Assembly (NCBI RefSeq): GCF_021028975.2
Contig: NC_059437.1
Span: 32,798,001 to 32,862,000, forward strand
Direction: 5' to 3'
DNA length: 64,000 bases
Source: Sphaerodactylus townsendi
Lineage: Eukaryota
Below are positions 13,886 through 59,242 of this stretch, piece by piece. Position numbers and translations under genes: made by a program. The notes below the pieces were generated by a model. That model saw only the letters and a list, made by a program, of their open reading frames with translations. It had not been told where the DNA came from and searched no databases. The stretch's first letter is position 1; every line of letters starts with the position of its first letter.

Positions 13886-13923
13886 CTGGGAAAGGGAGAG
13901 GCCACAATAGGATGCCGTTAGAA

Positions 13924-23624: not shown

Positions 23625-23772
23625 CTGCCCAGTGGCAAGAATGAAAAGGACATTACTGGGAGGAAGGCACACTAAGACTCCCTTACCCAAAGACACACAC
23701 ACACACACAACACCAGGGAAGTATAGTGAGGAGCTGATATAAGGCAAGGAACCTAGAGTGTCCAGACCTACC

Positions 23773-24057
23773 AAGAAGAAGAAGAGTTTGGATTTATATC
23801 CCCCCCTTTCTCTCCTATAAGGAGACTCAAAGGGGCTTGCAATCTCCTTTCACCCCTCCCTGCAACAAACACCCTAAGAGGTAGGTAGGGCTGAGGGAGC
23901 TCCAAAGAACTGTGACTAGCCCAAAGACACCCAGCTGACATGTGTTGGAGTGCACAAGCTAATCTGGTTCTCCAGATAAGCCTCCACAGCTCTAGTGGGA
24001 GGGGAATCAAATAGATTAGAGTACACCTGCCTTTAACCACTACAGCACACTGGCTCA
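23773..24057 (-). mobile_element. tRNA-derived SINE, Squam3-like
   Basis: Reverse complement of the 7987-8290 family, with an (AAG)n tail. Confidence 0.85.
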
Positions 24058-26776: not shown

Positions 26777-26790
26777 CCACAAGGGGGCAG
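26777..26790 (+). promoter_or_regulatory. candidate CTCF site
   Basis: CCACAAGGGGGCAG, close to the CTCF core consensus. Confidence 0.45.
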
Positions 26791-27000
26791 CAGCAATTCA
26801 GCCAAAGGATTCCAGAATCTGATAAGGGAGTTGGAAAAGATGGCACAGGAAAGGTATGGAGGGGAGCCGAAAAGACTGGCCTTTTGTTGTGGCATCACAG
26901 GAAACTCAAGTACCACCAAGCAAGCGCTTCTGCAACTGCAGTGCCCAGTAGAGCTGATGCAGTAAAAGGACAGGACAGGGGACCTCTCCAAGGGCTAGCT

Positions 27001-27148
27001 CAGAGATCTACAACCTGCGGCTCTGCAGATGTTCGTGGACTACAATTCCCATCAGCCCCTGCCACCATGGCCAATTGGTCATGGTGGCAGCGGCTGATGG
27101 GAATTGTAGTCCATGAACATCTGCAAAGCCGCAGGTTGCATACCCTTG
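27001..27148. mobile_element. palindromic hAT (Charlie/Buster-type) MITE
   Basis: Hairpin; exact TSD GGCTAGCT (26993-27000, 27149-27156). Confidence 0.88.
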
Positions 27149-27205
27149 GGCTAGCTAAAGTCTGGTCCGCTCTTGACTCTGCTCCAGCTGCCTGGCACCT
27201 CTCAC

Positions 27206-27357
27206 CTCCTGATGATCATCTTGAGTGTGCGGTAGGAGCCCTTGATGAGGATCAGAGCCTCCTGCCGAGAGCCATACAGCGGGGTCCCGTTGATGTTCAC
27301 CAGCTCGTCCCCAGGGTGCATCTTCTGTGACAAGGCTGCCTTCCCGCCATCCTCCAC
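27206..27357 (-). CDS. SHROOM4: SHROOM4 coding exon 2 (PDZ)
   Basis: CAG|...|GTGAG; VEDGGKAALSQKMHPGDELVNINGTPLYGSRQEALILIKGSYRTLKMIIR; 152 nt, phase 0/2. Confidence 0.96.
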
Positions 27358-27389
27358 CTGAACCAAAAGAAGGCCAACTGTAATTCATT

Positions 27390-27597
27390 TAGATACTTAT
27401 CCCTCACTTTTCTCCATTACAGAGATCCAAAGTGGCCTACAACACTGTTCTGCCATCATCCATTTTATCCTAACAACAATCCTGTAAGGCAGGCGAGACT
27501 GAAAGTACTGGCCGAAGGTCAACCACTGGACTTCCATGATAGTGGGGATTCCCACTGAGATCCTGGTCCCGGACTCTAACCACACCACCGTGCTGGC
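27390..27597 (-). mobile_element. older diverged SINE (Squam3/MIR-like)
   Basis: Minus strand GCCAGCACGGTGTGGTTAGAGT head and CCTTACAGGATTGTTGT body. Confidence 0.55.
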
Positions 27598-30500
27598 TTG
27601 TGAGAGCAAACAGGCAGGCTGTGCTCCTGCTCAAGGTCTTGTCAACACCCCCCCAGGCACTCCCCAATTTGCCCAGCAAGCGGCAGCCCCCATCAAAGGA
27701 GCCAAGGAGAAGGAAATGGAGAAAGACTATCCGGCCTCCTCTTACAAACATAGCAGCATTCTTCCCAAGAAGCAGGTCATGCTTCAAGCAACAACCCCTT
27801 AGTGCGGCACAACCTCTCTCCTCCAAAGTGAGGCAGAAATGAATACCAGCTGGAAATTGCTTAGTTTAGCATTAAAGAGAACAAACAAGCCAACTCCCCC
27901 CCACCCCCTCCCAGCCACACACAATTCTCCTGTGCCCGACTGGCAGCAAGTCCAGGGAAGAGCTTTAACAGAATGGAACACCACAGAGAGTGCCACCAAA
28001 TACCATCCCGCATCGCAGGGCAGTCTCTCATCCAGGCAACAATGCACCCCTCCTTTCTTCTGCAGCTGATATCTAACAACCTTTATTTAGAAAGCCCAGA
28101 TACCACCACTCCAGAAAAATGTTTATAGTTGGCAACAATACAAAGAATGATAACATCATTTTTGATAAATAGGGGAAAACCCACTCATATCAATACACTA
28201 ATAAAACCTCAGCCAGAACACAAAAACGGCATAAAACGTTCATCAGTCAAAAAATAATCCTCTTTAAAATAGTCCTCAGGCTTATCAAGGGAGATGTTTC
28301 TGATCAGGTTTCTCTTTACCTACTTCTCTGTTCATACCCTCAACCCACAGGAGAGATGGGGGGCTGGAACAATCTCCTCCCTTCCCCAAACAGCTCACCT
28401 GTGACCTCTCTCAACTCCAGATCACCTCCCAATTTAGGGGCCAATAAACTCCCCTTTTCTTGGCTCTTCATCCAATAGAAACTATTCCCCTCTGCTCTGG
28501 AGCCTTCCATCTTCTTGACCTTACCCAGAGAGAAATAGTCCCCTTTCTCTTGGATACCCCCTTTGACAAGGGAACAAGCTACAGTCTATCCTCACCTCCT
28601 GGCTGTAGAGCAGGGACCCTGAGGAGACGGTTCTGACAGCAACAACTCCAGGACCAAGCTGGGACAACAGAACCAGGCACGGCAGAGAGCTGGGCTTGGC
28701 CACCCTTCTCCGTCACAGTCACATGAAACACAAAGGGGGCTCCCTCAGCTGCTTCCCCCGCGGCCTGGCAAACACAAGGGCCCATTGTGCTGCCAAAATG
28801 CCAGTGGGACTGTCCAGAACCCACACAGGCCTTGTGATGCTGCTCGCCGGAAGAGTCCATGCTCAAGCCATGCCCAGCAGTGCAAGCCAAAACCATTCTG
28901 GCTAACAGAATGGATGATTGGCGGGTAGGAAAAATGGATGATTGGCAGGAAGGGGAAAACACAGAGAGAGAGAGAGCGCAAATGGAGACCTCACCACTAA
29001 GTCATGTGGTTTGACAAGTGGTCAGGCATACCCCCAAAACATTGATGACTTTGATTGGAAACAAGACCCCCTCCGGGCTAGTAGGTTCAGCTCTCCAATT
29101 CTGTCCTCAGGTTTGCAGGGACAGGCTAATATCTGGGGCCCTTGCAGAGAGAGATGCCACTTCTAACCTAGCAGATCCCTGCTACAATCTACAAACACTG
29201 AAGGGCACTAAAGAAATGCCAGCATTTCTTCATCTGCTTGGCTACCCCACGAGGCCCCAAAAGCTTGGCCCAGACACAAGTCCCAAAGTATCCAACTTCA
29301 CACACATCCAACTAAGATTCTCCCAAGGCCATGGCACGTGTTGACCAATTATGGCTGCTGAGACTTTTAAACACACACACAATGCTGAGAAGCTTCTTAA
29401 CATGGGAAGAGCCTTTCTAAGCCAACCCAAAGGCCAACGACAGAAGCCACCTGAGAAAATAGTTCAGAAGCTGCATGAATTGCCGCCCACAGTTAATCCT
29501 GGGATATGTACAAGTCAAGAAACTTTCTCAAAGCTATGGAGGTAGGCAAGATGCCTGTCTAGGCTGCGACAAGATTTCAAATCCCGATGGACTCCCGTCA
29601 CTTCTGAATGAGAGAACAGGGTTTAATAAGCAAAGTTGTTGAGTGGCGGGGCACAGTAATGTGAGTAATTTGTCCAGACTGCATGAAGGAGGAGAAAAAC
29701 CTGCCCTCTCCCACAGAGTGGAACCATCCACTGATCCCCAACAAAGAACAAATTCTGCTGAACAAATTCTGAACGGACAGTCACTCCAACTCTTCAAGCA
29801 TTACCATTCCTTGGAAAGAGCTAAAACACATGATTAACATTACAAAATTCCCCAAGAAACCCCTCAGCTTCTCTTAAGATCAGAATCTCAACTGATGAGA
29901 AACTCAAAAGGACAGGATGAGACCCATTTTTAAACAAACGTATATGGGAGATACTCTGTCACTCAGAATTGTTAAATTCAAAACATCTCCAGAACGGCAA
30001 GTTCTGCAGGCTTGCTAATGCTAAGGAATACCTGGCATTAAAACCAACAAATGAACTCCAGCAGCCAAGGACTCCTGTCCTCAATTGTAACGTAAAAAAC
30101 CCCAAACCTCCCGAGGTATGTTAATCACATACAGATACATGTGCTGGGGCTTTGAATACAGAATCTGTCATTTATCAGTGCTATAGCAATTTGCAGTGGA
30201 ATTGCCTCCTCTTACAAACATAGCAGCATTCTTTAAATGCAGTGAAAGTCCAGTTCCACATTTTGAAACTAAGCCGCAATAGTTGGGCAGATCTTAAGAA
30301 CACAGGTTTGCCAATAAGGCAAAATCATTACGGTAGTCCGCAAGAACTGTTTACCTTCCTATAGAGGTGTGGAATAAAAAGTTCCAAATCTCTTCCAAGA
30401 TACACCCTTCCTGAACATCCATAGGGGATTCTTATCTATACCTTATAAAGTGGTTATTTGAGAGACTATGAAAATAAAGTCTCCTTCACCATCCGAACTG

Positions 30501-30615
30501 CTGGGAAACCATCACCTTCCCACTTTCCGGAAATTACAAAGTCTAGTCATTCTTTTTAAATAATCATTTTCTAATGGCAAACTGATATGCCATAAGTTAG
30601 CCTTACCCTCAGGAG

Positions 30616-30751
30616 CACAGGTGTCAAACTCGTGGCCCTCCAGATGTTATGGACTACAGTTCCCATCATCCCCTGCCAGCATGATGCTGGCATGGGGATA
30701 ATGGGAACTGTAGTCCATAACATCTGGAGGGCCGCGAGTTTGACACCTATG
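30616..30751. mobile_element. palindromic hAT MITE
   Basis: CAGGTGTCAAACTC...GAGTTTGACACCT with the same internal GGACTACA.TTCCCATCA arms. TSD not clear. Confidence 0.8.
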
Positions 30752-32092
30752 CCCGGGCTCAGTGGATCGCAGAATGCTTCACTCAAATTCTGATGGGGAC
30801 CCAACTCTGCTCTGCTAGCAAGAAGCCTAATTGCAGCTTGAGGGCACTCAATTGCAGAAAACAGAGCACACTCCATTGGAGGAAAAGGAAGCATGTCTCA
30901 CCCTTCCAATTTCCCCTCTCCGTGATCCCACCACCCCACCTAGCCTCTGCTGGTTCTCCCATGCCCCCGGTCTCCCTACATGTCTGCTGCAGCTCCAAAC
31001 GCACGGAGCACAGCTAATGTACAAAATCAGCACATTCTCTCCAAATGCCACGAGGGGCTGAGCTCAGATCGGAAAGAAAACAAACAACCCTCTGCTCTAA
31101 ACTCTGGGTCTGCATCCCATGCATCTCAGACACATTTCGGAAATAGAGTCCAGATGGGGACGGCCAGCACAGTCAGAGGGCCTGGCACACTCAGAGCAAG
31201 AAGAGAGGCTCTCATTCCTCAAATCCCAGCTGGAGGCAACAGGGAGCTTGGAGTTTGCTAGGGAGGAGCAAACAGCAGGCCTGGACTGTAAAAATGCTGG
31301 ATGCGGAGGCTGTACACATATGTCTGAAGTCCCAGTCATGCGGGCTCCTGCCAGAGGTTTTCAAACTGCCTCCCAGAGAAGTACAGGATTCTCTGAAAGT
31401 TTGTCAAAAGTTCCCACACTAAGTCTTCTCCATCCCCATCTACAAGGGGAACGTAGTTCTCAGAACCCCTGCAGTTGCCTGGCAACTTTTCCAGTTTCCA
31501 AGAGCCTCAGCAGCCTTCTGAGTCCAAGATACCTCTCCTCCTGTAGGTACCACGATGGGGTTCTAAACATGACGCAAATGGCCCAGGAGCATTGGGGTGT
31601 GGCAGGCAAAGAACAGAGAAGCCAGAGTACTTGACAGCCCAGGTGAAGGAGGCCAAAAGCCAGTTCATCCATCTGTGGCACCAAGCCCAGGCAAGACTCG
31701 GCAACAGGGGCACGGTGTCTAGACGCTCCATCTATCTGGGGAGTCTGGGAATCCCATAGTGCAATTACTAATTAGATGTAGTGCCAAGAACATCAATTAT
31801 CAAATGTTCCCCATGCTCTCAAAAACAAGATACATGGAATAGCCTGGTTTCAAAAACAAAGATTGAAGAAGAATGGGGCAGTTTCAGAAATGCTGGAGCC
31901 CGAAACTGCCAGGCAGCTCCATGGAGAGCCCTAGGCAAATAGAGGATTTATGTGAAAGGGAGTCATGAAGCAGCAATCCATTTGGGAACGTTTTTAACCA
32001 CTCCACAGTTCTGCCCCAAAACTTAAATCTAAACTAGTCAGAGCAACCTGAGAAGCTAATTTTGTAAGTTGTGTACTGAGATGCCTCTAACG

Positions 32093-32227
32093 CAGGGGTC
32101 TGCAACCTGCGGCTCTCCAAATGTTCGTGGACTACAATTCCCATCACCCCCTGCCAGGATGGGGTGAATTAACTGATGGGAATTGTAGTCCATGAACATC
32201 TGGAGAGCCGCAGGTTGCAGACCCCTG
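32093..32227. mobile_element. palindromic hAT MITE
   Basis: CAGGGGTC...GACCCCTG; TSD CTCTAACG/CTCTAACC. Confidence 0.85.
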
Positions 32228-33129
32228 CTCTAACCCAATATTTCTATAGGCCAACAGTGCTTTCATCTCCACAGGGAAACAGGCAAGGTGGCAGAGAGGC
32301 AGCAATTGGCTTCTTGGACAAAAAAGACTCTCAAGACCACACACCCACCCACATTGCCCCAGTGAAAAGAAAAACCCGGGCTGCACAAATGTCCCTCCAC
32401 CCATATTAACAGTGGATGCACAACAGAGCGCATCAAAACCCAGGAAGGCTAAGACAATAACTTCCAACCTCTCCCAGCCCACTCCAAGACAAGGATATAA
32501 GGGCATCTTTCTTAGCCTTCAGGTAGCCATGATGAAGGGAACCGAGGTGGGAGCACAGGAAACGGAACCTTCTGCCACACATGCTGCCGGGGATTCAACC
32601 AACTGATACCTGATAAGCTTTGGGGACGTGAATTCTGAGCTCGGAATGAATGATCCAAATTTGCATTTAATTAACTTCTCTAAATAGTGGCTGCCAAATC
32701 TGGAATTTCACTTAGTCTGGAACTGTGAAGGGTGAGGAGGAGGAGGTCTGAGGTTGGGAGGATATTAGTGAAACTTTCAAAAGAGCTCACAAAGACAAAG
32801 AGATCCATCATCATTGTCCTCCTGCTATAGATTAGGCTGCAAGAAGATAAGCAGACGTGCGCCCCTCCCCACAGGAAACGACTGGCCTGCGGCTGGCTGG
32901 AACTCATAGACCCCCTGCTGTGGGTGGAAGTGCTGCCTCCTCCCCACTTTCTGGATTACAATGCTGCTTGGCAGCAGCTGCTCTTCACACCACAAGTGAG
33001 ATGCAATCGGAGGCGGCTGTACAGATGCACAATGCAGGACCAAATTGAAGTAAAAAACCCTTGTTCATTCATGACTGGCTCCCTCCAGACCAGAAGACCA
33101 AACCATGATGGGGATCCCCAGACTCGTTA

Positions 33130-33500
33130 GTGGTCAGGTACTCATACCCTGTATTGGCCTACTGTAACAATACACTACACAGGGCTGCACCTGAAGAATA
33201 TTCAGACACTGTGGGTAGTCAGTCCTGAGAGAGCTGGCTATATGGGTCTCATTATGCCAGAGTTGCATCATCTGTACTGGCTTCTAAGTGGTTTCTGGAC
33301 CCAATTCAGGTGCTGGACTTGACCTCTGGAGTATTAGTCCAGAGTGTATCATTTTCCTGTTTGGACCTACACAGAATTTGAGATCTTCCTCAGAGCCCCA
33401 CTGCATTTGCCTTGTCTGCCAGATGTGAGATGAGAAAGGCCTTTGCAAGAGTGGCAGCCAATTTGTGGAACTCCATGGCCAGAGTAGCAACTGAAACCCA
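33130..33500 (+). mobile_element. decayed L2-like LINE 3' fragment
   Basis: Remnants resembling YCN..Y.GL, L..L.WL..(F)..QF.VL of the L2 ORF2 C-terminus. Confidence 0.5.
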
Positions 33501-36028
33501 CACTATTTCCAGTAGTGAGACCTAGTCTAACTCCATCTCTTCCATTTTTTATGACTGTAAAATATTTGTTTCTAACTTCTGATGCTGCTGCTGCTGCTTT
33601 GTACTGGGTTTGGTTGTGTTTTGTTTGTTTGATAATTTCATTGGATACTGGTGGTTTTAGATAATTAGTGAGCTGTTCTTCAGAGAAAGCAGAGAGAACA
33701 GGTCCTCCGGCCACTGCTGACGTACAAGATGGGGCAGTAGAAAGGAAGCAACATTATGGATCCTGTGTCTGTTAGGCAGAGTTCTCTAACTACCAAAATG
33801 GGTAGGGCCAGGCCTGCCAAATTGGAGAAAGGAGGAGCCGTAAGTCTTTTGGCCCAAAACCAGGTCCCAGTTTCCAGGAGGGAGTGGGAAAGAAAAAGGG
33901 CCGGGCCAGAGCACACACAAAAAAGGGAGTTCACAGGCTGACGGCTAATTGTGGCACAAAGAGGCCCTTGTTCTTGCCTGGGCAGCTGGTGACTTTGCCA
34001 CAGAACAGCAAAGAAGATGCTAGCTGTCCTTGCCATCCTGCTGTCAAGGAAAAGATAGGAGGGACTCCCTTTCCATCACCACTGAGAGGGACTCGGCACA
34101 TGCTCAACCCTGCATCTCTTGAGCACATACAAAATTCCAGAAAGTTACTCCAGTTTGCATCAGCTGTATGCTCATTAACCCAACAGTGACCAGCAAGTTG
34201 CAAAAAGAGTGGATGGTCCCTGGCAAGCAAAACAAAAAGGATTGGGGCAAACGGAAACATGGCAGGAAGCTATGGGAAGAAGGAAGGAATTCTGGTTGCA
34301 TCTAGGAGGCTGAAGATCTAATCAAGATGTTGGTAATGCCTTCTCCAAAACTTACCAAACAGTTTAGGCTTAAAAGAAAAACAACACACAAAGAAGTCCA
34401 AGCATATAGGAGATCCAGATTTGGTGCCTGATTTTAGACACTATGCTTATCCCCCTCTCCCTCCAAGAAGCTCAGGGCTCCTCTGCATTTTATCCCCACA
34501 AATACTCTGAGATGTTGGTCAGGCTGAATGTGCAACTACTAGTCCAAAGCCACCTTGGCTACTTCATAGCGCAACAGACACTTGAAACAGGTCTCTAAAA
34601 TCCAAGTCCAACTAGCTGCTATATCACATCGCCTCTCATTGTGATACCACCATGAAGAAACAAGCCAAGTTCAGAGGAAATAACCACTCAATGCGTGGGA
34701 GTTACATGCTGAAGACCAGCCCCACCTGGGACATCAGTCGGCATCCTGAGCTTCATTCCCTTAACAAGAGAGACGTTCTAGATCTATAGTTCAGCTCCTG
34801 TTCAGCTCTATTCACTTCCAGAGGTGTCTTTCTTCACTTTCAAATGTCATCCAATTCTTCTTCCATACAGATATTTTGGTACATTGTGGCTCCCATGTAG
34901 CAGAACTGTTTTGAGAAGCATCCTCACGACCATCATCTCCTCCTCTCTCTTTTTTAGTCCTCCTTCCATATTTCCCCCCACTTTGCTGTGACCTTTTCTA
35001 CACCTGGTTCGGTGAGATCTATTCAAAAGATCACAGTCAAAGCACCCTAGCAAGGAGTACCGAAGGGAAGGTGCATAATTTGGATACTCCAGTCCACATC
35101 AGCATTATTTTCCCTGCCTCAATTCCCTTCAGCTGCCCCCCCCCTTCCACACACACACATTAACCAAATTTTTTTTAGGGCTTACAAAAACAGAATTCAA
35201 ACAGTTGTAAGTTAATTACCCTTGTTTAGTCCGCTGTGCCCTAAATCCTCTGATGGTGGGTGGAGGGAGGGAGGACAGGGGACTGAAGAAAGGAAACAGT
35301 GAGAGAAACAAGCATGAGGATGTTCCATTGCTGCTGCAAAGGCCCCTGAACCTGCAGTGGTAATGAAGAGCAACATGGAGAGCTGTTGCTGTGAAGAAGC
35401 AGCAGCAGCTGTCTCACATGCAAGGTGGCGATGCAAGGAAAATGGAAAAGCTCTGCTGTGTGGAAGAGGCCAACAGCCACTTCTCACAACTATCCCAGCA
35501 ACCACAGGGGCAGAGGGAGGTCTATTCCTGGCCCAGGTGGACCTGCTCAAACAAAAAGCAGATTCCCTTCCCGGCATGCCCCTCGCAAGCAACCCTCCAG
35601 GATGCAGCTTCTAGAGGTGGGTCCTGCAGCACACAAGCTATCTCATGACGAGGCACTACAAGCAAGGTTTCGCCTTCAGTCCCTGAAGCCGTTGTGACTT
35701 ATAGGCCTCCACAGATGCCAAAAGACAAAAGTCATCCTTTACACACCTGAAATCTTCTCCTTTCCTCCCGCAGGGACCAATCCAGTCCTGGCATCAAGAA
35801 GGCATTCCTCCCAGGGGAGTGGCCTTGCCTCAAGCACAAGAACCAAATGCCAAAGCTGGCAGTGCAGGAACAAGGACAGTTAATGATTCACTGTGGCTGG
35901 CCCTGGCTGATCTACACCCAGCCGACTCTCCTGGCAGACAGCCACCCACTTCAGCCCATCTAGGAAGTGGGTTGGGGGTGTATACAGATGGTTAGGAAAG
36001 CTTTGCTAACCTGAGTTTATTTCACACA

Positions 36029-36168
36029 GGCCACTTCCACACATGCAAAATAATGCACTTTCAATCCACTTTGCCGCTGGATTTGACTGTGGAAAATAGC
36101 AAAATCCACTTGCAAACAATTGTGAAAGTGGACTGAAAGTGCATTGTTCTGCATGTGTGGAAGGGACC
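36029..36168. mobile_element. palindromic MITE, PIF/Harbinger-like
   Basis: TIR GGCC.CTTCC.CACATGCA; 3-bp TSD ACA. Further copies at 36797, 40258 and 61644. Confidence 0.75.
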
Positions 36169-36796
36169 ACAGAGATTCACGTAGCAACACGAAAAAGCAT
36201 GCAATAGTGGGGTCATGGTGCAACATCAGCAGCAACACCTCCAAGAGTTCTGTATCCTTTCCAGTTATTATCACACACCCTCCCTGCCCATCAATCGATC
36301 CAACAGTGTGTGTGTGTGCTAGCATCTCCAGCAGGTTCAGGCTGATACTGCTTCACACATACAGTCTGTCTATCAAGCAGTCAGGGAGAAAGAGTATGCT
36401 GGGAGGAGATCAGTCCATAGCTGGGGGAAGTGGGTAACCAAAATTGTGTTACACACTGTTTCTCCGTTTAAGTATTTTTGAGGCTTTTTTAACTATTGGA
36501 ATTTGACTATTGCAAGTAGAAGCTTCACATTTTTTAAATTGGATATTCACTAAAAACATACATGTGCACTTTTTTTTTTTAAAAAAAAGGATAACAGAAC
36601 ATTTCAGCCATCATCTTCTAAGCCCATTCTCACAACTATGAATGCTTAGGGCTCTCCCTTAAAACCCTGACATTGCTCCCTAGATAAATGACCAGAAGAT
36701 AGAAAGCTGCAGTATACTGAGTCCACTGCCATTTGTTCCAACTTGCAGGGTCTCTCCCTTGAAAACAGAAAGGTCTTTTTCCACCCTGCCATCCAA

Positions 36797-36926
36797 GGCT
36801 CCTTCTGCACATGTAGAATAATGCACTTTCAATCCACTTTCACAATTCTTTGCAAGTGGATTTTGCTATTCCGCACAGCTGCGAAGTGCACTGAAAGTGT
36901 ACTATTCTGTATGTGCGGAAGGGACC
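36797..36926. mobile_element. palindromic MITE, PIF/Harbinger-like
   Basis: Same family as 36029-36168. Confidence 0.75.
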
Positions 36927-39599
36927 AAAGAGACTTTTAAACTGGGGAGATTAGGGATTGAGCCTGAAACTCTGTACATCCAAAGGAGGTGTTGTGCTGC
37001 TGAGCTACAGGACCTTCCACGCGCATGCATACAGCCATCTCAAATCAAATATCAAATTGACTTCTGAAAACTGACTTAGACAGTCCTTTATAATGTGCAA
37101 AAATGCTTCAGGCAGAACCCTAGAGGGAGCTTTTGCAGCAAGGTGGGGGAAAGTCAAATCCATTATTCCAGGAACCACAAGACAGGACAGTGACCAACTC
37201 CTTAATCAAGAAGCTTGGTAGAAATGCCTGGACTTACAAGAGACAGGGCTGGCCTGCTCCACAGGGCTCCAATGCGGCTTTTCAGCTACTGAAACAGACA
37301 GCACAGGAAAGCAAGGCACAAGGCAAACTGTGAAGAGGGGGCAAAGAGGAGCAGAAAGCGCCACATTGCTAAGTTTGGCAGACGCAAGGGAGAGGCCAGT
37401 AGGAATGGCAGGCCCTTCCCCACTTACTCTCAGCAAGAACTCCTGGTGCATATACAAGCCCACACAGTTATCATAACACTTTGTTAGTAGTTTCTCCTAT
37501 TGGTCAGGAAGGAGTTTCTGGGGAGATTTAAAACAAATACAGACTGGGTAAACCAACACTCAGGAAATGTTTTAAGGAGGTGGGGGGAGAAAAAGGGTGA
37601 AGTGCAGCACAAAGCCTCTTTCACGAGAACAGGAGAAGCAGCAGGCCTGAAATCAAGCTTGGGGCAAGCACAGCGGGTAAAGAAATCAAGCAAAATCAAA
37701 ATCTGCACTGCAGCTTCGAAGGCAAGGGATCAGGAGCCATCAATGACAGAGTCAAGGTGCCAGTGCAAGGGTATGGTATATGCCAGCAAGACTGCCTTAT
37801 CTGTGTTGCCACTGCCAAACAGGGGCCAGCAGAAACTCATCTGTGCCATTTGTAGGCAACTGTAATGTATTTCCACCCCTTTCTCCTCCTAAAACTAGCA
37901 AAATACTTCCCCAAGAACAGCTGATATTCATAAAGCCAGAGGGGAAAGAGAAGACCAGGAGAAATGGATAGCCATGATCCAGATCCACCCCAAGTAACAG
38001 TCTGGCAACTTTCATTCCTTCCTGCATAATCTTTTGTCTAGGGGGGGAAAAAACCACGTCGGGGCCCCAATGCCTTTTTGCTACTCAAAACTCAACAGGC
38101 GCTTTGTCCAACTTTGATTATTCGTCATTACACTCATTATTTGATGGACACAGGTGTGAAGCTACCTTTGACAGTTAAAAGGGTGATGGGGGTACATATC
38201 AGAGCTTCTTGCTCAGTCAAGGAATTCTTCAATACCACCAATCCAGCTGAGAAGTTTAATTAAATAATTTACATCCTGACTTATTTCTTTGGACTTGGGG
38301 CAACTAATCAACCATCCAAGCTGCAAAGACCCCCAAAGTCAATGCACATTTAAAAACAATGCACAGATTTTAAAGAACCACAAAGCTAAGCCAGCTGGAA
38401 TAATTCATCCTCGCACAAACACACTCTGCAATAGAACAATCTTGCATACTTTCCTGGATGTGGCCACCAAAGGCACACTCCAGTAGATCATTCTAGAGGG
38501 CTGGATCTGCAACTGAGAAAGGCCATGACCTAGCAGTTGCTGTACAGACAACCCTAAGTTGTATGCATGTTGCCTGCCCTCGGACACAGAATGCTGTACT
38601 ACTCACAGAAACTAACACACACTCCAGTGCCAATCAACCAGAGGCTGAGGCCATGATGGGTAGCAGGAGATTCACACAGGAAGGAAGTATTTTAAAGGGA
38701 CTGGCCCCTTGTTCAAACCCAACCATCCCATCAGCAACCCTCCATGGACCGCAATGCAAAACCAGCCGGCTCTTGACCTCCATACCCCTCTCCACATTCT
38801 TGCTGGCAGCTTTTACCTTCTGATCCCGCCTGAGCCGAGCCAGCCGTCTTCCCCAAGCCACAGATGGATTTGATTTTAATTGGCAAGTTGCATTAGGAGC
38901 ACAACCCTTTTTGGCAGTGCAGCAAGCCAAGCCCCAAAGGCCATCTCTAGCAGAGACTGGCACGGGAAAAGATACATTCACCACCCTGCGGAAAAATATA
39001 TGGTACCGGGGGGGGGGGGGGGGCTTGCGCTTATGAGGAAGTATGGCCTGCCAACCTCTAGGCAGAGCAACTGCTAAGTTGCATTCGCAGTCGAACCCGT
39101 TTTAATTAATGGAGGGCTGGGATTCAGGGACAGCACGTAAGTAGTTCTATCCAGGGCACCACAACACAAAGGCCTCAGGTCTGAAGATGCCAGCAACAAC
39201 CATGCTCTGCCACACAGTCACCACTATCAGAGCGGGAAAAGCCAAGCGACACGGTAGTTTCAGTCCATCGTTCAAAGACAAAGCACAAATGACTCCAGTC
39301 CTCAGAGGTGCTCAGGAGGCGTAGTCGCCCCGGCTGGATGGCTATTTCTACACCTGGGCAAGCAACAGTCGCCAAAACACGGGCTTACAGATGCCCCGGG
39401 GAAGCACTCTTGGCGTGAAGGCGATCCTCCTCCCCAGCAAGCCCTCTTCTCCCGGATCCCGCTAGTCTGCAACAGGGGTGCACCGTACAACCGCCCCAGG
39501 GTGTTTTGCAAAAATGAGGCAGTAAAGCAACCACTCTCCCCTCGCCAGGCCCAACTCAAACCAAAAACTTTCCCCGACACAACTAAACTCCGGAGAAAC

Positions 39600-40250
39600 A
39601 ACCAAATGGCGGCGGAGGGGGCGTAAGAGAGCGCGGGGGCGACGCTGGCAGCAGAGCCCTCACAGCCCCTGAGCCCGCCAGCAGGACCTCACGGGCCTCT
39701 CTCACCTTGGAGACGATGAGGGGCTCGCCATGCTCCAGCCCCCCGCGTAGAGTGAAGCCCCAGGGCGCGCCGCCGCCCAGCTGCACGTGCACGTACTGGA
39801 AGGAGACCAGCAGCCGGCTGGCCGTCGGGCTTTCCCGCCGCCGCGACTGCGCCTCCTCCCCCGTCGGGCGCGCCATGGCACCATCCCGCAGCCCCTCACA
39901 CACGGCGGGCCCGGCCAACCCGACGGCCGCTCGGCATCGACGGGACGGACGATGTCTGCGGGCTGGGGAGGCGGGCCGGAGGCGGCGGCGGTGGGTGGGA
40001 CAGGGCGAGACGGGCGGAGCTGCCGGCGCTCCGCGCTACCAGGCAGCGCTGGCCTTTACTTCCGAGCAAGCTCCCGTTGCACCCTCTCTGAGCCGTCCTT
40101 TCAAGTTCCCAAATGACGTCGTCCAGCTCTGGCGAAAGAAAGGATTTCTCTAACGCCACTTCTCCTTTGTGTGAGTAGTGTAAAAGCACGCGATCACGTT
40201 GGCAGTAATTTCGCCGCCGTGATTGAGGCACACGGGGTGCAAAAGCGAAT
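39600..40250 (-). promoter_or_regulatory. SHROOM4 CpG-island promoter / 5' region
   Basis: CpG-rich region spanning exon 1; GC boxes, ETS-like ACTTCCG (about 40038), CRE-like TGACGTC (about 40114). Confidence 0.75.
39706..39876 (-). CDS. SHROOM4: SHROOM4 coding exon 1 (PDZ start)
   Basis: gccATGG Kozak; [33 protein letters not shown]; |GTGAG donor; 171 nt, phase 0. Confidence 0.93.
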
Positions 40251-48262: not shown

Positions 48263-48629
48263 ATGGCCACCCTAGCTGCCTTATGTTCTTGTGGAACTTT
48301 ATTTCTCATGATGATGCTGTTTCCGCTAGAGCATGGCTTGGAGGGGGGCCAGGATGCTGCTGCTACTGCTACTGCTGCTGCTGCTGTGGGGGCTCTCTCT
48401 GGAGCCCCCTCTCTTCCACTCATTCAGGTGCTTCTGGGCCAGGCCCCACCCAAGACCAGCCCCAGGGGCCGAAACAAGCATCTAGCCAGAGGGCAGCCCC
48501 TGCGCTACATGCTGAACTTGTATCGGAGCGTTGCCGACAGGCATGGTCGCCCGCGTAGGAACCGGCAGCTGGCCACCAATACCATTCGCCTGGTCAGGCC
48601 TTTTGCCAAGACCCGCCGGCCTGGGGCAG
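48263..48629 (+). CDS. BMP15: BMP15 exon 1 (signal peptide, prodomain N-terminus)
   Basis: atcATGG; hydrophobic leader; PSLPLIQVLL, QPLRYMLNLYRSVADRHGRPRRNRQLATNTIRLVRP; G|GTGAGT; 367 nt, phase 1. Confidence 0.95.
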
Positions 48630-48651
48630 GTGAGTCGGGAGGGGCTGAAGT

Positions 48652-48860
48652 GAGGTTGCCAGCTCCAGGCTGAGAAAGACTTGGACATTTGGGGGGTGAA
48701 GTCTGAAGGGTTTGGGAAGGGGAGGAACTTCAGTGGGGTAAATTCCACAGAGTCCACCTTCCAAAATGCCATTTTCTCTAAGTGAAGTGATCTCTGTCAC
48801 TTGAAGATCAGTTGTAATAAGGGGAGATCTCAGGCCATCACCTGGAGGTTGGCAATCCTA
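48652..48860. mobile_element. MITE with AGG(G)TTGCCA terminal inverted repeats in the BMP15 intron
   Basis: AGGTTGCCAGCTCCAGG...CCTGGAGGTTGGCAATCCT. Related copies at 54296-54467 and 60894-61188. Confidence 0.7.
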
Positions 48861-50258
48861 GGCTAAGGGCTCTGTAGAGGAGAGAGCTGTGAGGGAGGGG
48901 GTTTGTTCTCTAGGTTGGTGGTTTCCCGTTCCATGGGCGATCTGCAAAATTTGATCTGTTGCATTGGAAGCTCAGAGGGTTGATGAAATCTTAAAATTCA
49001 ACCAGCATGGCTGCCAGCTTTGACGCAGGACAGACCTTTAAGAGCTGATAAGAAAGGGTCCCTTATTTGTTAATGTGGATAGTTGTGCCCTGCTTGTCTG
49101 TATAGTGGAGACTGAAAGTGGGCCACAGCGTTCTATTCTTCCTCCTCCCTCTCCACCTTTCCTCTCATGTAATTCGGTTTGGCCAGAGGGCCACTTGGCA
49201 CTGGGAAGGTGGGGGCTCTGTTTGAAGGTTGCTATCTTTGTCCTCTGTGGAAGGGTGTTGGGCAAGAGTTGTTAGTTTTGTTCACGTCTGTGAGCTGGCT
49301 TTCTTTCTGTGCCTGGAAACCCACAGGGTTCTTTCTCTATTGCCTCTGTCTACTGTTGTCTGAAGGTTCACAGGCCACAGCTATTCAGTGTTACTTCCAG
49401 AGAGCAGGTGGCAGCTGCTATCTCATGGTCTGCAGCTTTCTGTGATAACTCAGGACAAGGGGAGGAGAGCCAGGTACAGAATAAGACACCTACATGTTAC
49501 CTAGACTTTTGGGCTAGCCCTGGGCAGATCTAGATCAGAACCTCTCTTTCCATGAAACTCCTTGGCTAACCTTGGACAAGTTCTCTCCAGCCTAATCTAC
49601 CTCACAAGCTTGTTGTAAAGGTAAAGTGGAAGAGTGGATTGCGTATATTGCCTTGGAAGGCCATGATAAAAATGTAACTGAATATAAGGATGTACCTTCT
49701 GCTACAGTTCCAAAGCATGACTTTGAAGTGTAGCGTTTCTAGGAAGGAAGGTGATGGGAATGTAATGGTTAATGGAGTAAATGTCTGAGAACCTTTGCAC
49801 CATTAACCCCTCCCCTTAGAAGAAAAGTTTTGGGTTTTGGGTTGAACTTTGCAACTTTGCCATTTGGGTTGAACTTTGCAAGCTGAGTAACTGAATACCT
49901 TTAGGATGATGGCGTAATAACTTGGGTGGGGGGAGGTCCTTTCCCAAAAATCCCTGTGCCCAAGAGTTTGCCTTGGTCTGGCAAATGGGAAATGTCAGTT
50001 CACTGGTGGATTCCACACAGCTTAAATATAATGGCTTTAGGATGTCCTACAAAGATCCATTTTGGCATGTTGTGTTTCCACAGAACACAAGCATTGCCAG
50101 CCAAAATGGATCTTTTTTTCCCCTGCCTGCTGCATAGAGCTCTTGTCAGTTTCACAATGGCGCCCACCATTTTGTGTGCTGCAGCAGATGATGAATAGAG
50201 TTTGTCTTGCCCAGTGATCCTGTGCCCATGGCTTTGACCCACTCCTTTGATCCTGCAG

Positions 50259-51148
50259 GTCCCTGGTTGGTCTGGAATCTCGACTACCGCCTGGAAATCC
50301 AGCCACAAGTGGAGCACCTGGTGAGGGCCACTCTGGTCTATTCTAGGACTATGTCCTTGGCTCAAGGCCAGTTCTTGTGCACAGCTGAGCTGCTGTCTAG
50401 CAAAGATGTCCTGCTGAGGACCACCCTGAGCCTCACTTTGCCACAGGTTAGCAAGAGAAATGCTACCACCTTTTCGGGCAAAGACAGCTGGGTGGAGATG
50501 GATCTTTCTACGTACCTTCAGCCGTGGGTCTGGGCTGCCCAGAACAGCCAAGTTCTCCATGTGAGTCATGCATGTACCTTTGTGGGGCAGCCTTGGGGCT
50601 CCACCCCTGATCCTGCCTGGGAGGACACAGTGTCCCTAAATGACCCCTTCTTGTTACTTTACCTCAATGACACATTGAGTGGACTTTGGACCAGGCTAGG
50701 GGGCTCAGGCTCAGGGGAGGGGCCCTTTGAAGAGAAGCACCTCAAAGGGCCTGTTCAGATGCGCAGAGCCCGCCAGGCGGGCAATCTTGCCCTCGACCTC
50801 CCCAGCTACCTTCGAACGAACCGCGCTAAGAAGAGGGACTGTTCCCTCCACCGCTTCCGTGTCAGCTTTCAGCAGCTGGGCTGGGACCACTGGATCATCG
50901 CGCCACATTCCTACCAGCCCCAGTACTGCAAGGGCAATTGTCCCCGTGTCCTGCACTTTGGCTACCACTCCCCAAATCATGCCATCATTCAGAACTTCAT
51001 TAACGAGCTGGTAGACAAGAGTGTCCCGCCTCCCTCCTGCGTCCCTTACGAGTACAGTCCAATCAGCATCCTCATGATGGAACAGAATGGAACCATCCTT
51101 TACAAAGTGTACGAGGACATGATTGCAAAATCCTGCACTTGTCGGTAA
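50259..51148 (+). CDS. BMP15: BMP15 exon 2 (prodomain, RRAR site, 124-aa mature TGF-beta domain from 50774)
   Basis: CAG| acceptor in phase 1; PFLLLYLND; CSLHRFRVSFQQLGWDHWIIAP, YCKGNC, SPNHAIIQN, PPSCVP (Ser replaces the dimerisation Cys, as in BMP15/GDF9), NGT sequon, MIAKSCTCR-stop. Confidence 0.97.
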
Positions 51149-57361: not shown

Positions 57362-57380
57362 GAGATAAATAAAGGGCGGG
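57362..57380 (+). promoter_or_regulatory. TATA-like box and GC box of the LEAP2-like gene
   Basis: GATAAATAAAGGGCGGG about 110-120 bp upstream of the ATG. C/EBP-like TTGCTCAA at 57076-57083. Confidence 0.5.
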
Positions 57381-57482: not shown

Positions 57483-57563
57483 ATGGCTTGTGTGCTTTCC
57501 TCTGGAGCTCGGACAGCCCTAATGCTTGGGGTGCTTTTGCTCCTCTTCCTCAGTTCCCAGCAG
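57483..57563 (+). CDS. LEAP2-like prepropeptide exon 1 (signal peptide)
   Basis: gacATGG Kozak; MACVLSSGARTALMLGVLLLLFLSSQQ; perfect donor CAG|GTAAGT; phase 0. Confidence 0.85.
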
Positions 57564-58655
57564 GTAAGTCATGTCATGTCAGAGGGGTGAATTGGGAGTG
57601 GGACAAGAAGGGGGCAAAGCCAGAGTAGTAGTAGCCTTTGGCAAGACAGGCTGCACTTTGGGAGCTTCCTCTGCACCCTCTGCAGCTGCAACAACCAACC
57701 TGTGCAGAAATGGAAAGAGCCTGGCTCTGACCCCGTCCCTCTTGACCTGCTGCTCAGCTCCTTCTGTGAAGCAAATAGTTTGGCCCCCATTATTGTGATT
57801 TGTATGGGAGAAGAAGGATGCTGTTCTGAGGATTCCTGTCAGATAAGGAGGATTTATTCCCAGGGCCAGATCTTAATTTGCTGATTGAGGCAGCTTCCAC
57901 ACGGTGAGGGGTTCCAGGACTTTGTTGCTACAAATGAAGTGGCATTTGCACTGGCAATGAAGTGTCTACATGAGAATTTTGTGCATGCTTTTCTCTGTTG
58001 GGCTTGCCATTTCCCCTGTATTTCCTCCCACTGCACCACTGGAAGTCTTTGGAAGGTTTTAAAAACTATTGCTATTAAGACATAGCACAGTGCCTTTATA
58101 AAAGTCCATTGGTGTAACCCACTAGTAACTAGTTCCTCAAAAAGGGCTAGAGATTTACCTTTAAAAGAGAGAAAGAGAGCTAAGAATTCAGCGGAGCCTT
58201 CTTGATTGTGGCAAAAGATTATAACGTTATTGTGCCCTAGTGCAAGAACAGTAACTCCCAACACCCTCTGGAGGAAGGGGAGAAAGGGTAGCCATTGGAA
58301 CTGAGGCAAGGAAAATGATGCCAATATGTGTAGATCTTTCACCTTCCTGTCCAGGTGGCTTTCTTACACATTTGGACAGTGTTCTTTCTGCAAAGACTAA
58401 ACCAAATGAGGTTTGAGAAGAAATATATTGAGCACAGGGAATGCCCAGAGAGGGGATGGTTAGAGAATGCCATTGTGTGGACGCTCCCCCCACCCCTTCC
58501 CCAATCCTGTGACTTAATTAAACAGTTGCTTATTTTAATTTCTAAAAAAAAGGTATAGATTCTTTCTTGGGGTCTTACTGGAGCTCAGTCCCAGGATCAA
58601 TTTAAATAACAGGCCTAAGTTCAGGAGTATGGGAAATAATCACAAAGTGCTGTGG

Positions 58656-58656
<1 letters not shown>

Positions 58657-58720
<64 letters not shown>

Positions 58721-58733
58721 TGAATGAATGAAT
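58657..58733. repeat. compound (TG)n(AG)n(AATG)n microsatellite
   Basis: Directly visible in intron 1 of the LEAP2-like gene. Confidence 0.95.
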
Positions 58734-58814
58734 CGGGGTGGGGGTTAATAGCAAGCTGTTGAGGCACAGTTCATACCAAGAAGTTGTCACCAAGTCCATC
58801 CCTCTCTTCTGCAG

Positions 58815-59014
58815 GTGCTGGCCACGCATGCCAGAGGCCAAGCCTTCACTGGGCTGAAGCTCCACATGGCATCTGCTTCCAAGATAGCTCCTTCCAGCTG
58901 GCGCCTGCTCTTGCGTCGAACCAAGCGTTCCACTCCCTTGTGGCGGACAATGGGCAGTAAACCCTTGGGCGCCTTCTGCAAGAGAGGGCTGGAGTGTAGT
59001 ACCTACACATGCCA
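58815..59014 (+). CDS. LEAP2-like exon 2 (propeptide, RRTKR site, mature peptide from 58929)
   Basis: Polypyrimidine tract + CAG|; VLATHARG...LLLRRTKR/STPLWRTMGSKPLGAFCKRGLECSTYTC; CA|GTGAGT; 200 nt, phase 0/2. Confidence 0.92.
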
Positions 59015-59205
59015 GTGAGTATGAGGTGCCCACTTGCAGGGAGGAAAAAAAAGGGCTCGACACTGTCCAGGGCCACAGGAAAAGGATGGCAACATGGCAG
59101 CATCTTGGCCTTCAAGTACTGTGGCAGAGATCAAAAGAAGACTCAGGGAGGGAGGACGAGTGGCTACTCCCCTGCTCACATCTGTGTTGTCTGCCTCTTT
59201 CCTAG

Positions 59206-59242
59206 GAATGGGCACTGTGCAGACCCCCAGGTCAAATCCTGA
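59206..59242 (+). CDS. LEAP2-like exon 3 (fourth Cys, stop)
   Basis: TCTTTCCTAG|; (Q)NGHCADPQVKS-TGA; phase 2 matches exon 2. Confidence 0.9.

What the first reader, a model, noticed from the sequence alone, without database searches (positions are those of the whole stretch)
57483..59242. Hidden 3-exon LEAP2-family gene downstream of BMP15 (candidate second LEAP2 / ghrelin-receptor ligand or antimicrobial peptide)
Seen in sequence: exons 57483-57563, 58815-59014 and 59206-59242 have canonical GT-AG sites and matching phases (0, 2). They join to MACVLSSGARTALMLGVLLLLFLSSQQVLATHARGQAFTGLKLHMASASKIAPSSWRLLLRRTKR/STPLWRTMGSKPLGAFCKRGLECSTYTCQNGHCADPQVKS. The product has a signal peptide, a furin-type RTKR site and a cationic 40-aa mature peptide with Cys at 17, 23, 28 and 33. 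Established: human LEAP2 (MTPFWRGVSLRPIGASC...) is 40 aa with this Cys spacing and a 3-exon layout, and is both an antimicrobial peptide and the endogenous GHSR1a antagonist. Inference: the sequence (TPLWRTMG.KP.GA.C, GHC...KS, long propeptide) resembles teleost LEAP2A/B as recalled, more than amniote LEAP2. It may therefore be a distinct paralogue that is easily missed by annotation. No ORF in the supplied track contains it whole.
Basis: partly seen in the sequence, partly recalled or inferred. Interest (0 to 1): 0.93.

Follow-up and report, generated by a model that had tools for sequence, protein, structure and literature searches.

The report
Second LEAP2 hormone gene beside BMP15
This gecko DNA holds an intact, selectively conserved three-exon gene for a second LEAP2-type peptide between BMP15 and PHKA1; by position and sequence it matches the "LEAP2" of fish rather than the LEAP2 of mammals, so reptiles probably carry a ghrelin-receptor ligand that mammals appear to lack.

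Summary
Exon 2 alone passes Pfam LEAP-2 (31.8 bits, cut-off 27).

The gene is not new to databases. Its orthologues are RefSeq models in Paroedura ("uncharacterized", 105 aa, 66% identical), Elgaria and Pogona ("LEAP2-like" / "LEAP2"). Related models exist in emu, crocodilians, turtles, amphibians and coelacanth.

In every informative locus it lies in the block SHROOM4(-) / BMP15(+) / LEAP2-like(+) / PHKA. Zebrafish leap2, Lates and Takifugu LEAP2 are also next to PHKA. The gene tree follows the species tree from ray-finned fish to the window.

Canonical LEAP2 lies in the paralogous block SHROOM1-GDF9-UQCRQ-LEAP2-AFF4. It coexists with this gene in alligators. The window gene is therefore a distinct, ancient paralogue (probably a 2R ohnologue) and the positional orthologue of fish leap2.

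Against the Paroedura orthologue, dN/dS is 0.13 for the mature peptide and 0.65 for the signal peptide plus propeptide.

The likely product is a furin-released 40-aa, four-Cys peptide that keeps the TPLWR motif which binds GHSR.

RNA evidence could not be obtained. Whether this gecko also has a canonical LEAP2 could not be tested.

The parts
57365..57371 (+). TATA-like element (ATAAATA) about 115 bp upstream of the ATG; putative core promoter
   Evidence: Found. The ATAAA core and the flanking 190 bp are conserved in the Paroedura locus. Function is inferred, not shown.
57483..57563 (+). Exon 1 (coding part): 27 codons, most of the signal peptide (n-region with R10, hydrophobic core LMLGVLLLLFL)
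   Evidence: Maximum Kyte-Doolittle 11-residue mean 3.19. 27 codons also in Paroedura. Donor is GTAAGT.
57564..58814 (+). Intron 1 (phase 0), with a compound (GT)n(GA)n(GAAT)n microsatellite at about 58660-58735
   Evidence: GT...AG ends.
58815..59014 (+). Exon 2: end of the signal peptide (VLA, predicted cut before T), propeptide, RRTKR site and the first 28 residues of the mature peptide up to the third Cys, plus 2 bases of a split codon
   Evidence: Pfam LEAP-2 31.8 bits. 66 codons, no indel against Paroedura.
58914..58928 (+). Codons for R-R-T-K-R, a furin-type (R-X-K/R-R) processing site directly before the mature peptide
   Evidence: Read. Aligned R-x-x-R sites occur in Elgaria, Pogona, emu, alligator, amphibians and fish. 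Paroedura has RRTSH instead.
58929..59014 (+). Mature peptide, first part: STPLWR... with Cys17, Cys23, Cys28
   Evidence: This is the only stretch of the gene still alignable at DNA level with Elgaria (58929-59003). dN/dS 0.13 for the mature part.
59015..59205 (+). Intron 2 (phase 2), placed right after the third Cys
   Evidence: The same position and phase occur in 11 other species.
59206..59242 (+). Exon 3 (coding part): last base of the Q codon, then NGHCADPQVKS (with Cys33) and TGA
   Evidence: Still alignable at DNA level with Pogona (59193-59248).
48263..51148 (+). Context: BMP15, two coding exons (about 48263-48634 and about 50213-51148), with the mature domain lacking the fourth Cys (PPPSCVP)
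   Evidence: Pfam TGF_beta 110 bits. Alignment. Exon 1 aligns to Xenopus 'BMP15 isoform X2'. Orthologous exons are present in Paroedura, Pogona, emu and Lates.
13571..39918 (-). Context: SHROOM4-type gene, from the ASD2 exon at 13571-13945 to the PDZ-start exon at 39583-39918
   Evidence: Pfam ASD2 128 bits. The first exon is 84% identical to the emu gene that carries PDZ and ASD2.

Best explanation
The stretch is an intact gene for a 105-residue secreted prepropeptide of the LEAP2 family.

Evolutionary identity. It is the gecko member of an old gene lineage that sits between BMP15 and PHKA1. The LEAP2 genes of ray-finned fish, including zebrafish leap2, belong to this same lineage. It is a paralogue, most simply a 2R ohnologue, of the canonical LEAP2 that lies by GDF9, UQCRQ and AFF4 in mammals and other tetrapods.

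Proposed mechanism (inferred steps are marked):
1. The signal peptide is removed, predicted after VLA at residue 30 (inferred from sequence).
2. A furin-type convertase cuts after RRTKR (inferred from the consensus).
3. This releases a 40-residue, net +3 peptide held by two disulfides (connectivity inferred from human LEAP2).
4. Its N-terminal TPLWR motif binds the ghrelin receptor GHSR as an antagonist or inverse agonist, as measured for the zebrafish orthologue (inferred by orthology). Weak antimicrobial activity is a possible secondary property.

What is shown here: gene structure, family membership, synteny, orthology, and purifying selection on the mature peptide.

Sub-confidences: a real, selected LEAP2-family gene of the BMP15-linked lineage, about 0.85-0.9; acts on GHSR, about 0.5.
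For: Structure and family:
- Exons and splice sites are as described.
- Pfam LEAP-2 is passed by exon 2 alone and by 14 of 14 clade members.
- The family profile matches human LEAP2 (2l1q) at E 6.7e-12 over the whole mature peptide.

Orthologues:
- Paroedura XP_077164705.1, 105 aa, 66% identical. Elgaria XP_062997830.1, Pogona XP_020651581.3, emu XP_025963564.1, alligators, turtles, amphibians, coelacanth, a parrot and a sawshark also carry the gene.

Synteny:
- TGF-beta gene, then LEAP2-like, then PHKA in Paroedura, Elgaria and Pogona.
- Shroom(PDZ+ASD2), TGF-beta gene, LEAP2-like, PHKA in emu.
- LEAP2-like then PHKA in alligator.
- leap2 then PHKA in zebrafish. TGF-beta gene, LEAP2, PHKA in Lates. 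PHKA then LEAP2 in Takifugu.
- BMP15 is flanked by SHROOM4 and PHKA1 in chicken and turtle (PMC9928969).
- The human order is SHROOM1, GDF9, UQCRQ, LEAP2, AFF4 (PMC4837217).

Two genes in one genome:
- Canonical LEAP-2 of both alligators is printed in PMC4078517 Table 7. It is distinct from their PHKA-linked 110-aa proteins.

Phylogeny and structure:
- The gene tree equals the species tree: window with Paroedura 98/85, squamates 100/99, sauropsids 98/99, ray-fins 96/90.
- The intron position is conserved from fugu to gecko.

Selection:
- dN/dS is 0.127 for the mature peptide and 0.65 for the signal peptide plus propeptide (Fisher p 5e-5).
- Only the mature-peptide coding parts still align at DNA level with Elgaria and Pogona.

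Function by orthology:
- Zebrafish Leap2, which has Leu4 like this peptide, binds zebrafish, croaker, coelacanth and human GHSR. Phe4, Trp5 and Arg6 are the residues important for binding (bioRxiv 10.1101/2022.09.21.508860).
- leap2 knockout in zebrafish raises GH and growth (PMC11437977).
- P, W and R of the motif are invariant in 127 sequences.
Against:
- No AATAAA or ATTAAA lies within 1.75 kb after the stop codon, whereas the other species examined have one 0.26-1.25 kb downstream.
- The predicted mature N-terminus is Ser, not the nearly invariant Met. A croaker LEAP2B that lacks Met1 did not bind GHSRs.
- The nearly invariant Arg after the third Cys is Gln here.
- The closest orthologue (Paroedura) has RRTSH, which is not a furin site, so processing in geckos may differ.
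- The squamate branch is long (0.84 changes per column), which would also fit a change of function.
- The duplication date rests on synteny. No canonical LEAP2 could be placed in the tree, so the tree is unrooted.
Confidence: 0.72

Rival explanations
1. The gene is real and selected, but its peptide works mainly as a host-defence (antimicrobial) peptide, or on a receptor other than GHSR. The squamate copy has drifted away from ghrelin-receptor antagonism.
For: - The family was first described as antimicrobial, and fish members are mostly studied as such (PMC11767564 and PMC11722547).
- The peptide is cationic (5 K+R, 2 D+E).
- Met1 is lost in all four squamates, and the furin site is lost in Paroedura.
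- The croaker LEAP2B without Met1 does not bind GHSR.
- The squamate branch is long.
Against: - Antimicrobial concentrations reported for LEAP2 are far above physiological levels (PMC11767564).
- The mature peptide is under strong purifying selection (0.13). The receptor-binding P, W and R are invariant across 127 sequences. This is unusual for antimicrobial peptides.
Confidence: 0.2
2. This is the only LEAP2 gene of this gecko. The canonical GDF9-linked copy has been lost, so this gene is functionally 'the' LEAP2 rather than a second one.
For: - The rest of the genome could not be searched. Earlier notes of the scan hold nothing on LEAP2 or GDF9.
- RefSeq names the Pogona protein plain 'LEAP2'.
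Against: - A canonical LEAP-2 is annotated in the squamate Anolis, in turtles and in alligators (PMC4078517 Table 7).
- Elgaria's protein is named 'LEAP2-like', which suggests another LEAP2 is annotated in that genome.
Confidence: 0.15
3. The exons are not an independent gene. They serve as alternative 3' exons of BMP15 read-through transcripts, or the gene is a silent relic.
For: - A Xenopus tropicalis RefSeq model joins BMP15 exon 1 to the LEAP2-like exon.
- No polyA hexamer lies near the stop codon, and there is no RNA evidence.
Against: - The gene has its own ATG, its own signal-peptide exon and a conserved TATA-like promoter.
- Independent 90-124 aa gene models exist in more than 10 tetrapods.
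- The Xenopus model runs into the intron and lacks exon 3, which points to a mis-model.
- dN/dS of 0.13 excludes a relic.
Confidence: 0.05

Closest known systems
Canonical LEAP2 (human LEAP2, PDB 2L1Q; chicken, Anolis and alligator LEAP-2)
   Same: - Same Pfam family.
- 40-aa mature peptide with Cys at 17/23/28/33.
- Signal peptide, propeptide and a basic cleavage site.
- Three exons.
- N-terminal TP(F/L)WR motif.
   Different: - Different locus: BMP15-PHKA1 here, GDF9-UQCRQ-AFF4 for the canonical gene.
- Only about 38-44% identity in the mature peptide.
- Signature ...WRTMGSKPLGAF... here, against ...WRGVSLRPIGAS... in the canonical peptide.
- A 35-aa propeptide, against about 15 aa.
- Ser instead of Met at position 1.
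Zebrafish Leap2 (NM_001128777) and other ray-finned fish LEAP2
   Same: - Same position, next to PHKA and, in Lates, a TGF-beta gene.
- Same intron positions.
- Leu4 and the S/T-K-P signature.
- About 61% identity in the mature peptide.
- Part of one clade that follows the species tree.
   Different: - Fish peptides start with Met and have shorter propeptides.
- GHSR binding and the knockout phenotype are measured in fish only. Nothing has been measured in any reptile.
RefSeq models of the same gene in other reptiles (Paroedura LOC143822881, Elgaria and Alligator sinensis 'LEAP2-like', Pogona 'LEAP2')
   Same: Direct orthologues with the same length class, the same three exons and the same neighbours.
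   Different: - They are named inconsistently.
- No paper in the searchable library discusses them as a separate lineage.
Hepcidin (LEAP-1)
   Same: A liver-expressed, Cys-rich peptide from a three-exon gene, released by furin.
   Different: Eight Cys, an unrelated sequence and a different Pfam family. It was not a hit in any search here.

Membership tests
LEAP-2 family (Pfam PF07359) | Profile score above Pfam's gathering cut-off | tested here: met
   Exon 2 alone scores 31.8 bits against a cut-off of 27. 14 of 14 clade members pass. The clade profile matches human LEAP2 at E 6.7e-12.
LEAP-2 family (Pfam PF07359) | 40-residue mature peptide with four Cys at 17, 23, 28 and 33 | tested here: met
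   counted exon by exon with the split codon.
LEAP-2 family (Pfam PF07359) | Disulfides Cys17-Cys28 and Cys23-Cys33 | not testable with these tools
   This needs peptide chemistry or NMR.
LEAP-2 family (Pfam PF07359) | Signal peptide, propeptide and a basic convertase site before the mature peptide | tested here: met
   Hydrophobic core with KD mean 3.19. RRTKR lies directly before STPLWR. No signal-peptide predictor was on hand, so the cleavage point is read by the -3/-1 rule.
LEAP-2 family (Pfam PF07359) | Three exons and two introns | tested here: met
   The literature gives three exons for LEAP-2 genes (PMC9986249). The intron position in canonical LEAP2 was not compared.
LEAP-2 family (Pfam PF07359) | N-terminal T-P-(F/L)-W-R receptor-binding motif | tested here: met
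   TPLWR is present. P, W and R are invariant in 127 sequences.
LEAP-2 family (Pfam PF07359) | Binds GHSR as antagonist or inverse agonist; expressed in liver or gut | not testable with these tools
BMP15/PHKA1-linked LEAP2 lineage (fish-type LEAP2, 'LEAP2-like' of RefSeq) | Lies directly downstream of BMP15, with SHROOM4 beyond it | tested here: met
BMP15/PHKA1-linked LEAP2 lineage (fish-type LEAP2, 'LEAP2-like' of RefSeq) | PHKA gene on the other side | tested here: inconclusive
   The window ends at a point that corresponds to Paroedura locus L001 position 18258. PHKA starts there at 18436. The two loci are collinear up to the end of the window.
BMP15/PHKA1-linked LEAP2 lineage (fish-type LEAP2, 'LEAP2-like' of RefSeq) | Groups with the clade's members in a tree, and carries the G-S/T-K-P signature | tested here: met
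   Tree; K and P are invariant.
Canonical LEAP2 orthologue (GDF9-UQCRQ-AFF4-linked) | Position next to UQCRQ, GDF9 and AFF4 | tested here: not met
   The neighbours are BMP15 and SHROOM4. No gene is called between the TGF-beta gene and LEAP2-like in four orthologous loci. The human order is given.
Canonical LEAP2 orthologue (GDF9-UQCRQ-AFF4-linked) | Mature-peptide signature W-R-G-[VI]-S-(L)-R-P-[IV]-G-A | tested here: not met
   The window has W-R-T-M-G-S-K-P-L-G-A. This was compared with the sequences printed.

The most novel reading that the evidence does not exclude
LEAP2 exists as two ancient ohnologues. One is linked to GDF9 and is kept by mammals. The other is linked to BMP15 and PHKA1; it is kept from sharks and ray-finned fish to amphibians, reptiles and some birds, and was not found in mammals. 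If so, all the fish 'LEAP2' work has been done on the copy mammals lack, and reptiles, birds and amphibians may have two endogenous ghrelin-receptor antagonists. The fast-evolving squamate copy has lost Met1, and in one gecko the furin site. It may have taken on a new target or a role tied to its ovarian neighbour BMP15.
Probability: 0.5. Interest if true: 0.62.

Novelty: new member of a known kind. Interest (0 to 1): 0.5.

Why it matters
LEAP2 is the endogenous antagonist of the ghrelin receptor and a current drug lead.

- The reviews read here describe tetrapods as having one LEAP2. Studies of fish LEAP2 treat it as the counterpart of the mammalian hormone.
- The synteny and tree found here indicate that the fish gene corresponds to a second gene. 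That gene persists in reptiles, amphibians and some birds, and was not found in mammals.
- This changes how fish and reptile results should be transferred to mammals.
- It raises a directly testable question: do sauropsids regulate GHSR with two peptides?
- It explains inconsistent database names for the same gene: 'LEAP2', 'LEAP2-like', 'uncharacterized', and a BMP15 'isoform'.

For this window alone the result is modest: a correctly spotted member of a known family that was absent from the supplied ORF list.

Tried and rejected
Searches and tools that gave nothing:
- The word-indexed protein search with exon 2 found nothing. This reflects the index, not absence.
- A 46-aa profile built by reference, meant to pull out canonical 76-80 aa LEAP2, found only two fragments of the same clade. 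The full-length profile listed only fish and clade members among its top 120.
- As a result, no canonical LEAP2 was available by reference. I did not type one in, so the tree is unrooted. Comparison with canonical LEAP2 rests on the printed alignments and on Table 7 of PMC4078517.
- NCBIfam has no model for these proteins.
The Atlas model of the alligator orthologue is of low confidence, so no fold argument is made.
- Complex prediction was not used, because GHSR is not among the sequences it permits.

Uninformative loci:
- The frog, turtle (Emydura), caecilian and salmon LEAP2B loci showed no informative neighbour within 10 kb.

Step left out on instruction:
- The spliced 105-aa model was not searched, folded or looked up, and every search used single exons by reference.

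Rejected readings:
- The neighbour is GDF9: rejected.
- A chance ORF: rejected.
- A tandem duplicate in the window: rejected.

The two strongest-scoring hits are repetitive proteins of an alga and an unnamed ENA record. They match only the Ala/Ser/Leu-rich propeptide, in 14-20 stretches, and were set aside as compositional.
Full report
**1. The observation**

Reading 57300-59500 shows the following:
- An ATG at 57483 in the context AGACATGG.
- An exon ending CAG|GTAAGT at 57563.
- An acceptor ...CTTCTGCAG| before 58815.
- A donor CA|GTGAGT after 59014.
- An acceptor ...TTTCCTAG| before 59206.
- A TGA at 59240-59242.

The split codon CA|G is Gln, and exon 3 adds NGHCADPQVKS. The phases are 0 and 2.

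The mature part after RRTKR is 40 residues. It has Cys at 17, 23, 28 and 33, five Lys+Arg and two Asp+Glu. The window has no N runs and only one LEAP2-like copy.

All searches used single exons by reference, and the spliced 105-aa model itself was not searched, folded or looked up.

**2. Family**

- Exon 2 alone scores 31.8 bits against Pfam LEAP-2 (cut-off 27, E 1.3e-7).
- It matches the solved human LEAP2 peptide 2L1Q weakly (20 bits).
- A full HMMER pass over 1.84 billion representatives gave 49 hits.
- The best real hit is a 105-aa protein, 66% identical over residues 5-66 of exon 2. It is Paroedura picta XP_077164705.1, named only "uncharacterized protein LOC143822881".
- Further hits are "LEAP2-like" or "LEAP2" models of Elgaria, Pogona, emu, alligators, gharial, turtles, newts, a caecilian, frogs and coelacanth. 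There are also a parrot, a sawshark, a bichir, a sturgeon and many teleosts. No mammal appeared.
- All 14 members tested pass Pfam LEAP-2.
- A 127-sequence profile of the clade matches human LEAP2 over the whole mature peptide at E 6.7e-12.

Homology with canonical LEAP2 is therefore secure but distant. Identity in the mature peptide is about 38-44% with human and Anolis LEAP2 (sequences printed). It is about 61% with zebrafish Leap2 and alligator LEAP2-like.

**3. Surroundings**

- Upstream on the + strand lies a two-exon TGF-beta gene, at about 48263-48634 and 50213-51148. Its mature domain reads PPPSCVP where other BMPs have two Cys. That is the GDF9/BMP15 hallmark (established knowledge).
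- Further upstream, on the minus strand, is a Shroom gene. It has an ASD2 exon at 13571-13945. Its first exon at 39583-39918 is 84% identical to the first exon of the emu Shroom gene, whose product carries PDZ and ASD2. That is the SHROOM4 architecture; SHROOM1, the neighbour of GDF9, has no PDZ domain (my knowledge).
- A Xenopus tropicalis RefSeq protein named "bone morphogenetic protein 15 isoform X2" aligns with the window's TGF-beta exon 1 (49% identity, E 5e-15).
- PMC9928969 reports SHROOM4, PHKA1 and HDAC8 as the neighbours of BMP15 in chicken and softshell turtle.

**4. Synteny of the orthologues**

| Species | Gene order |
|---|---|
| Paroedura, Elgaria, Pogona | TGF-beta gene(+), LEAP2-like(+), PHKA(+) |
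| Emu | Shroom PDZ+ASD2(-), TGF-beta gene(+), LEAP2-like(+), PHKA(+) |
| Chinese alligator | LEAP2-like, PHKA |
| Zebrafish (reference leap2) | leap2 directly upstream of PHKA |
| Lates | TGF-beta gene, LEAP2, PHKA |
| Takifugu | PHKA, LEAP2 |

- The window is collinear with the Paroedura locus at 70-80% identity, non-coding DNA included. It stops just short of the point where PHKA begins there.
- By contrast, the human order around canonical LEAP2 is SHROOM1, GDF9, UQCRQ, LEAP2, AFF4 (PMC4837217).
- Two paralogous blocks, Shroom / GDF9-or-BMP15 / LEAP2, are most simply explained by duplication of the whole block. That means the early vertebrate genome duplications (inference).

**5. Two genes, not one relocated gene**

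- PMC4078517 Table 7 prints canonical LEAP-2 precursors for Anolis, both alligators and two turtles. They are 76-78 aa and read ...MTPFWRG[VI]S....
- The same two alligator species also have the 110-aa PHKA-linked protein, under other accession numbers.
- At least crocodilians therefore carry both genes, and a squamate (Anolis) has the canonical one.
- Whether this gecko does could not be tested.

**6. Phylogeny and gene structure**

- I built a maximum-likelihood tree of 35 clade members plus the window's exon 2.
- It groups the window with Paroedura (98/85), then the squamates (100/99), then the sauropsids (98/99).
- Amphibians (93/85), coelacanth and ray-finned fish (96/90) follow in species-tree order.
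- The tree is unrooted, because no canonical LEAP2 was available by reference.
- The phase-2 intron directly after the third Cys is shared by gecko, anguid, agamid, emu, alligator, turtle, frog, salmon, zebrafish, Lates and fugu.

**7. Selection**

Figures are against Paroedura, counted exon by exon.

| Part | dN | dS | dN/dS |
|---|---|---|---|
| Whole coding sequence | 0.174 | 0.456 | 0.38 |
| Mature peptide | 0.087 | 0.68 | 0.127 |
| Signal peptide plus propeptide | 0.236 | 0.366 | 0.65 |

- For the mature peptide, Fisher's test gives p = 5e-5.
- With the distant squamates Elgaria and Pogona, the only parts of the gene that still align at DNA level are 58929-59003 and 59193-59248. Both encode mature peptide.
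- This is the signature of a processed bioactive peptide.

**8. Transcript signals**

- A TATA-like ATAAATA lies at 57365. The surrounding 190 bp are conserved in Paroedura.
- No AATAAA or ATTAAA occurs within 1.75 kb after the stop codon. The other species have one 0.26-1.25 kb downstream.

**9. Mechanism**

- By homology, the precursor should lose its signal peptide after VLA and be cut after RRTKR. It should then fold with two disulfides.
- The N-terminal TPLWR keeps the residues that matter for GHSR binding (Phe4, Trp5 and Arg6 in man).
- It has Leu at position 4, as in zebrafish Leap2. That peptide binds zebrafish, croaker, coelacanth and human GHSR (bioRxiv 10.1101/2022.09.21.508860).
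- Loss of zebrafish leap2 raises GH expression and growth (PMC11437977).
- I therefore commit to GHSR antagonism as the most likely function, with odds of about 0.5.

Points against this function:
- Position 1 is Ser, not Met, and a croaker paralogue lacking Met1 did not bind.
- The Arg after the third Cys is Gln here.
- Paroedura has RRTSH instead of a furin site.
- The squamate branch is long.

A mainly antimicrobial or otherwise changed function is the main rival.

**10. Novelty**

- The gene is already modelled by RefSeq in several reptiles, so it is a new member of a known kind.
- What I could not find in the searchable literature is any recognition that this is a separate lineage. No paper pairs LEAP2 with PHKA1, with BMP15 synteny, with "LEAP2-like" as a tetrapod gene, or with ohnologues.
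- The reviews read describe mammals as having one LEAP-2 and teleosts three paralogues. They treat the fish genes as LEAP-2 orthologues.
- The Xenopus model that fuses BMP15 exon 1 to the LEAP2-like exon shows how annotation loses the gene.

**11. Verdict**

- Interest is moderate. The window adds one more orthologue. The lineage-level reading, that fish leap2 corresponds to this gene rather than to the mammalian one, deserves a proper rooted analysis.

Noticed in passing
P0020 (Xenopus tropicalis XP_017952151.1); compare window 48263-48673: A RefSeq 'BMP15 isoform X2' model joins BMP15 exon 1 to the LEAP2-like exon 2 and then runs into the intron (it ends ...CRYSRWCILT). It is either a mis-model or a real read-through transcript. 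It shows how the LEAP2-like gene can be hidden inside BMP15 annotation.
   Followed up: partly
L001:12381-12518 (Paroedura picta), aligned to window 58914-58928: The closest orthologue has RRTSH where the window has RRTKR. It therefore lacks a furin consensus directly before the mature peptide. Cutting after the RR would leave a three-residue N-terminal extension. All four squamates lack the Met1 found in nearly all other members.
   Followed up: partly
window 59243-61000: No AATAAA or ATTAAA lies within 1.75 kb downstream of the stop codon. The only variant hexamer noted is TATAAA at 60161. The 3' end of the transcript is undefined.
   Followed up: partly
window 58660-58735: Compound microsatellite (GT)n(GA)n(GAAT)n in intron 1, about 80 bp upstream of the exon 2 acceptor.
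   Followed up: no
window 47212-47287, 53956-54084, 55702-55855, 60980-61051: Copies of a short interspersed repeat of about 70-140 bp, some as adjacent inverted pairs. They match several places in both orientations in the Paroedura locus (L001 about 6985-7107, 14661-14754, 19328-19401, 22268-22415). This is presumably a gecko SINE or MITE-like element.
   Followed up: no
P0001 (Closterium sp., 1871 aa) and P0003 (ENA, 792 aa): The two top-scoring hits of the HMMER search match only residues 4-49 of exon 2 (the Ala/Ser/Leu-rich propeptide), in 20 and 14 repeated stretches. This is most likely compositional, not homology.
   Followed up: no
window 13571-39918 (-) and 48263-51148 (+): SHROOM4 and BMP15 lie head to head, about 8.3 kb apart. 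The same pair is only about 2.3 kb apart in emu (L003).
   Followed up: partly
window 59013-59014 + 59206: The split codon encodes Gln at a position that is Arg in at least 90% of 127 family members (the residue after the third Cys).
   Followed up: no
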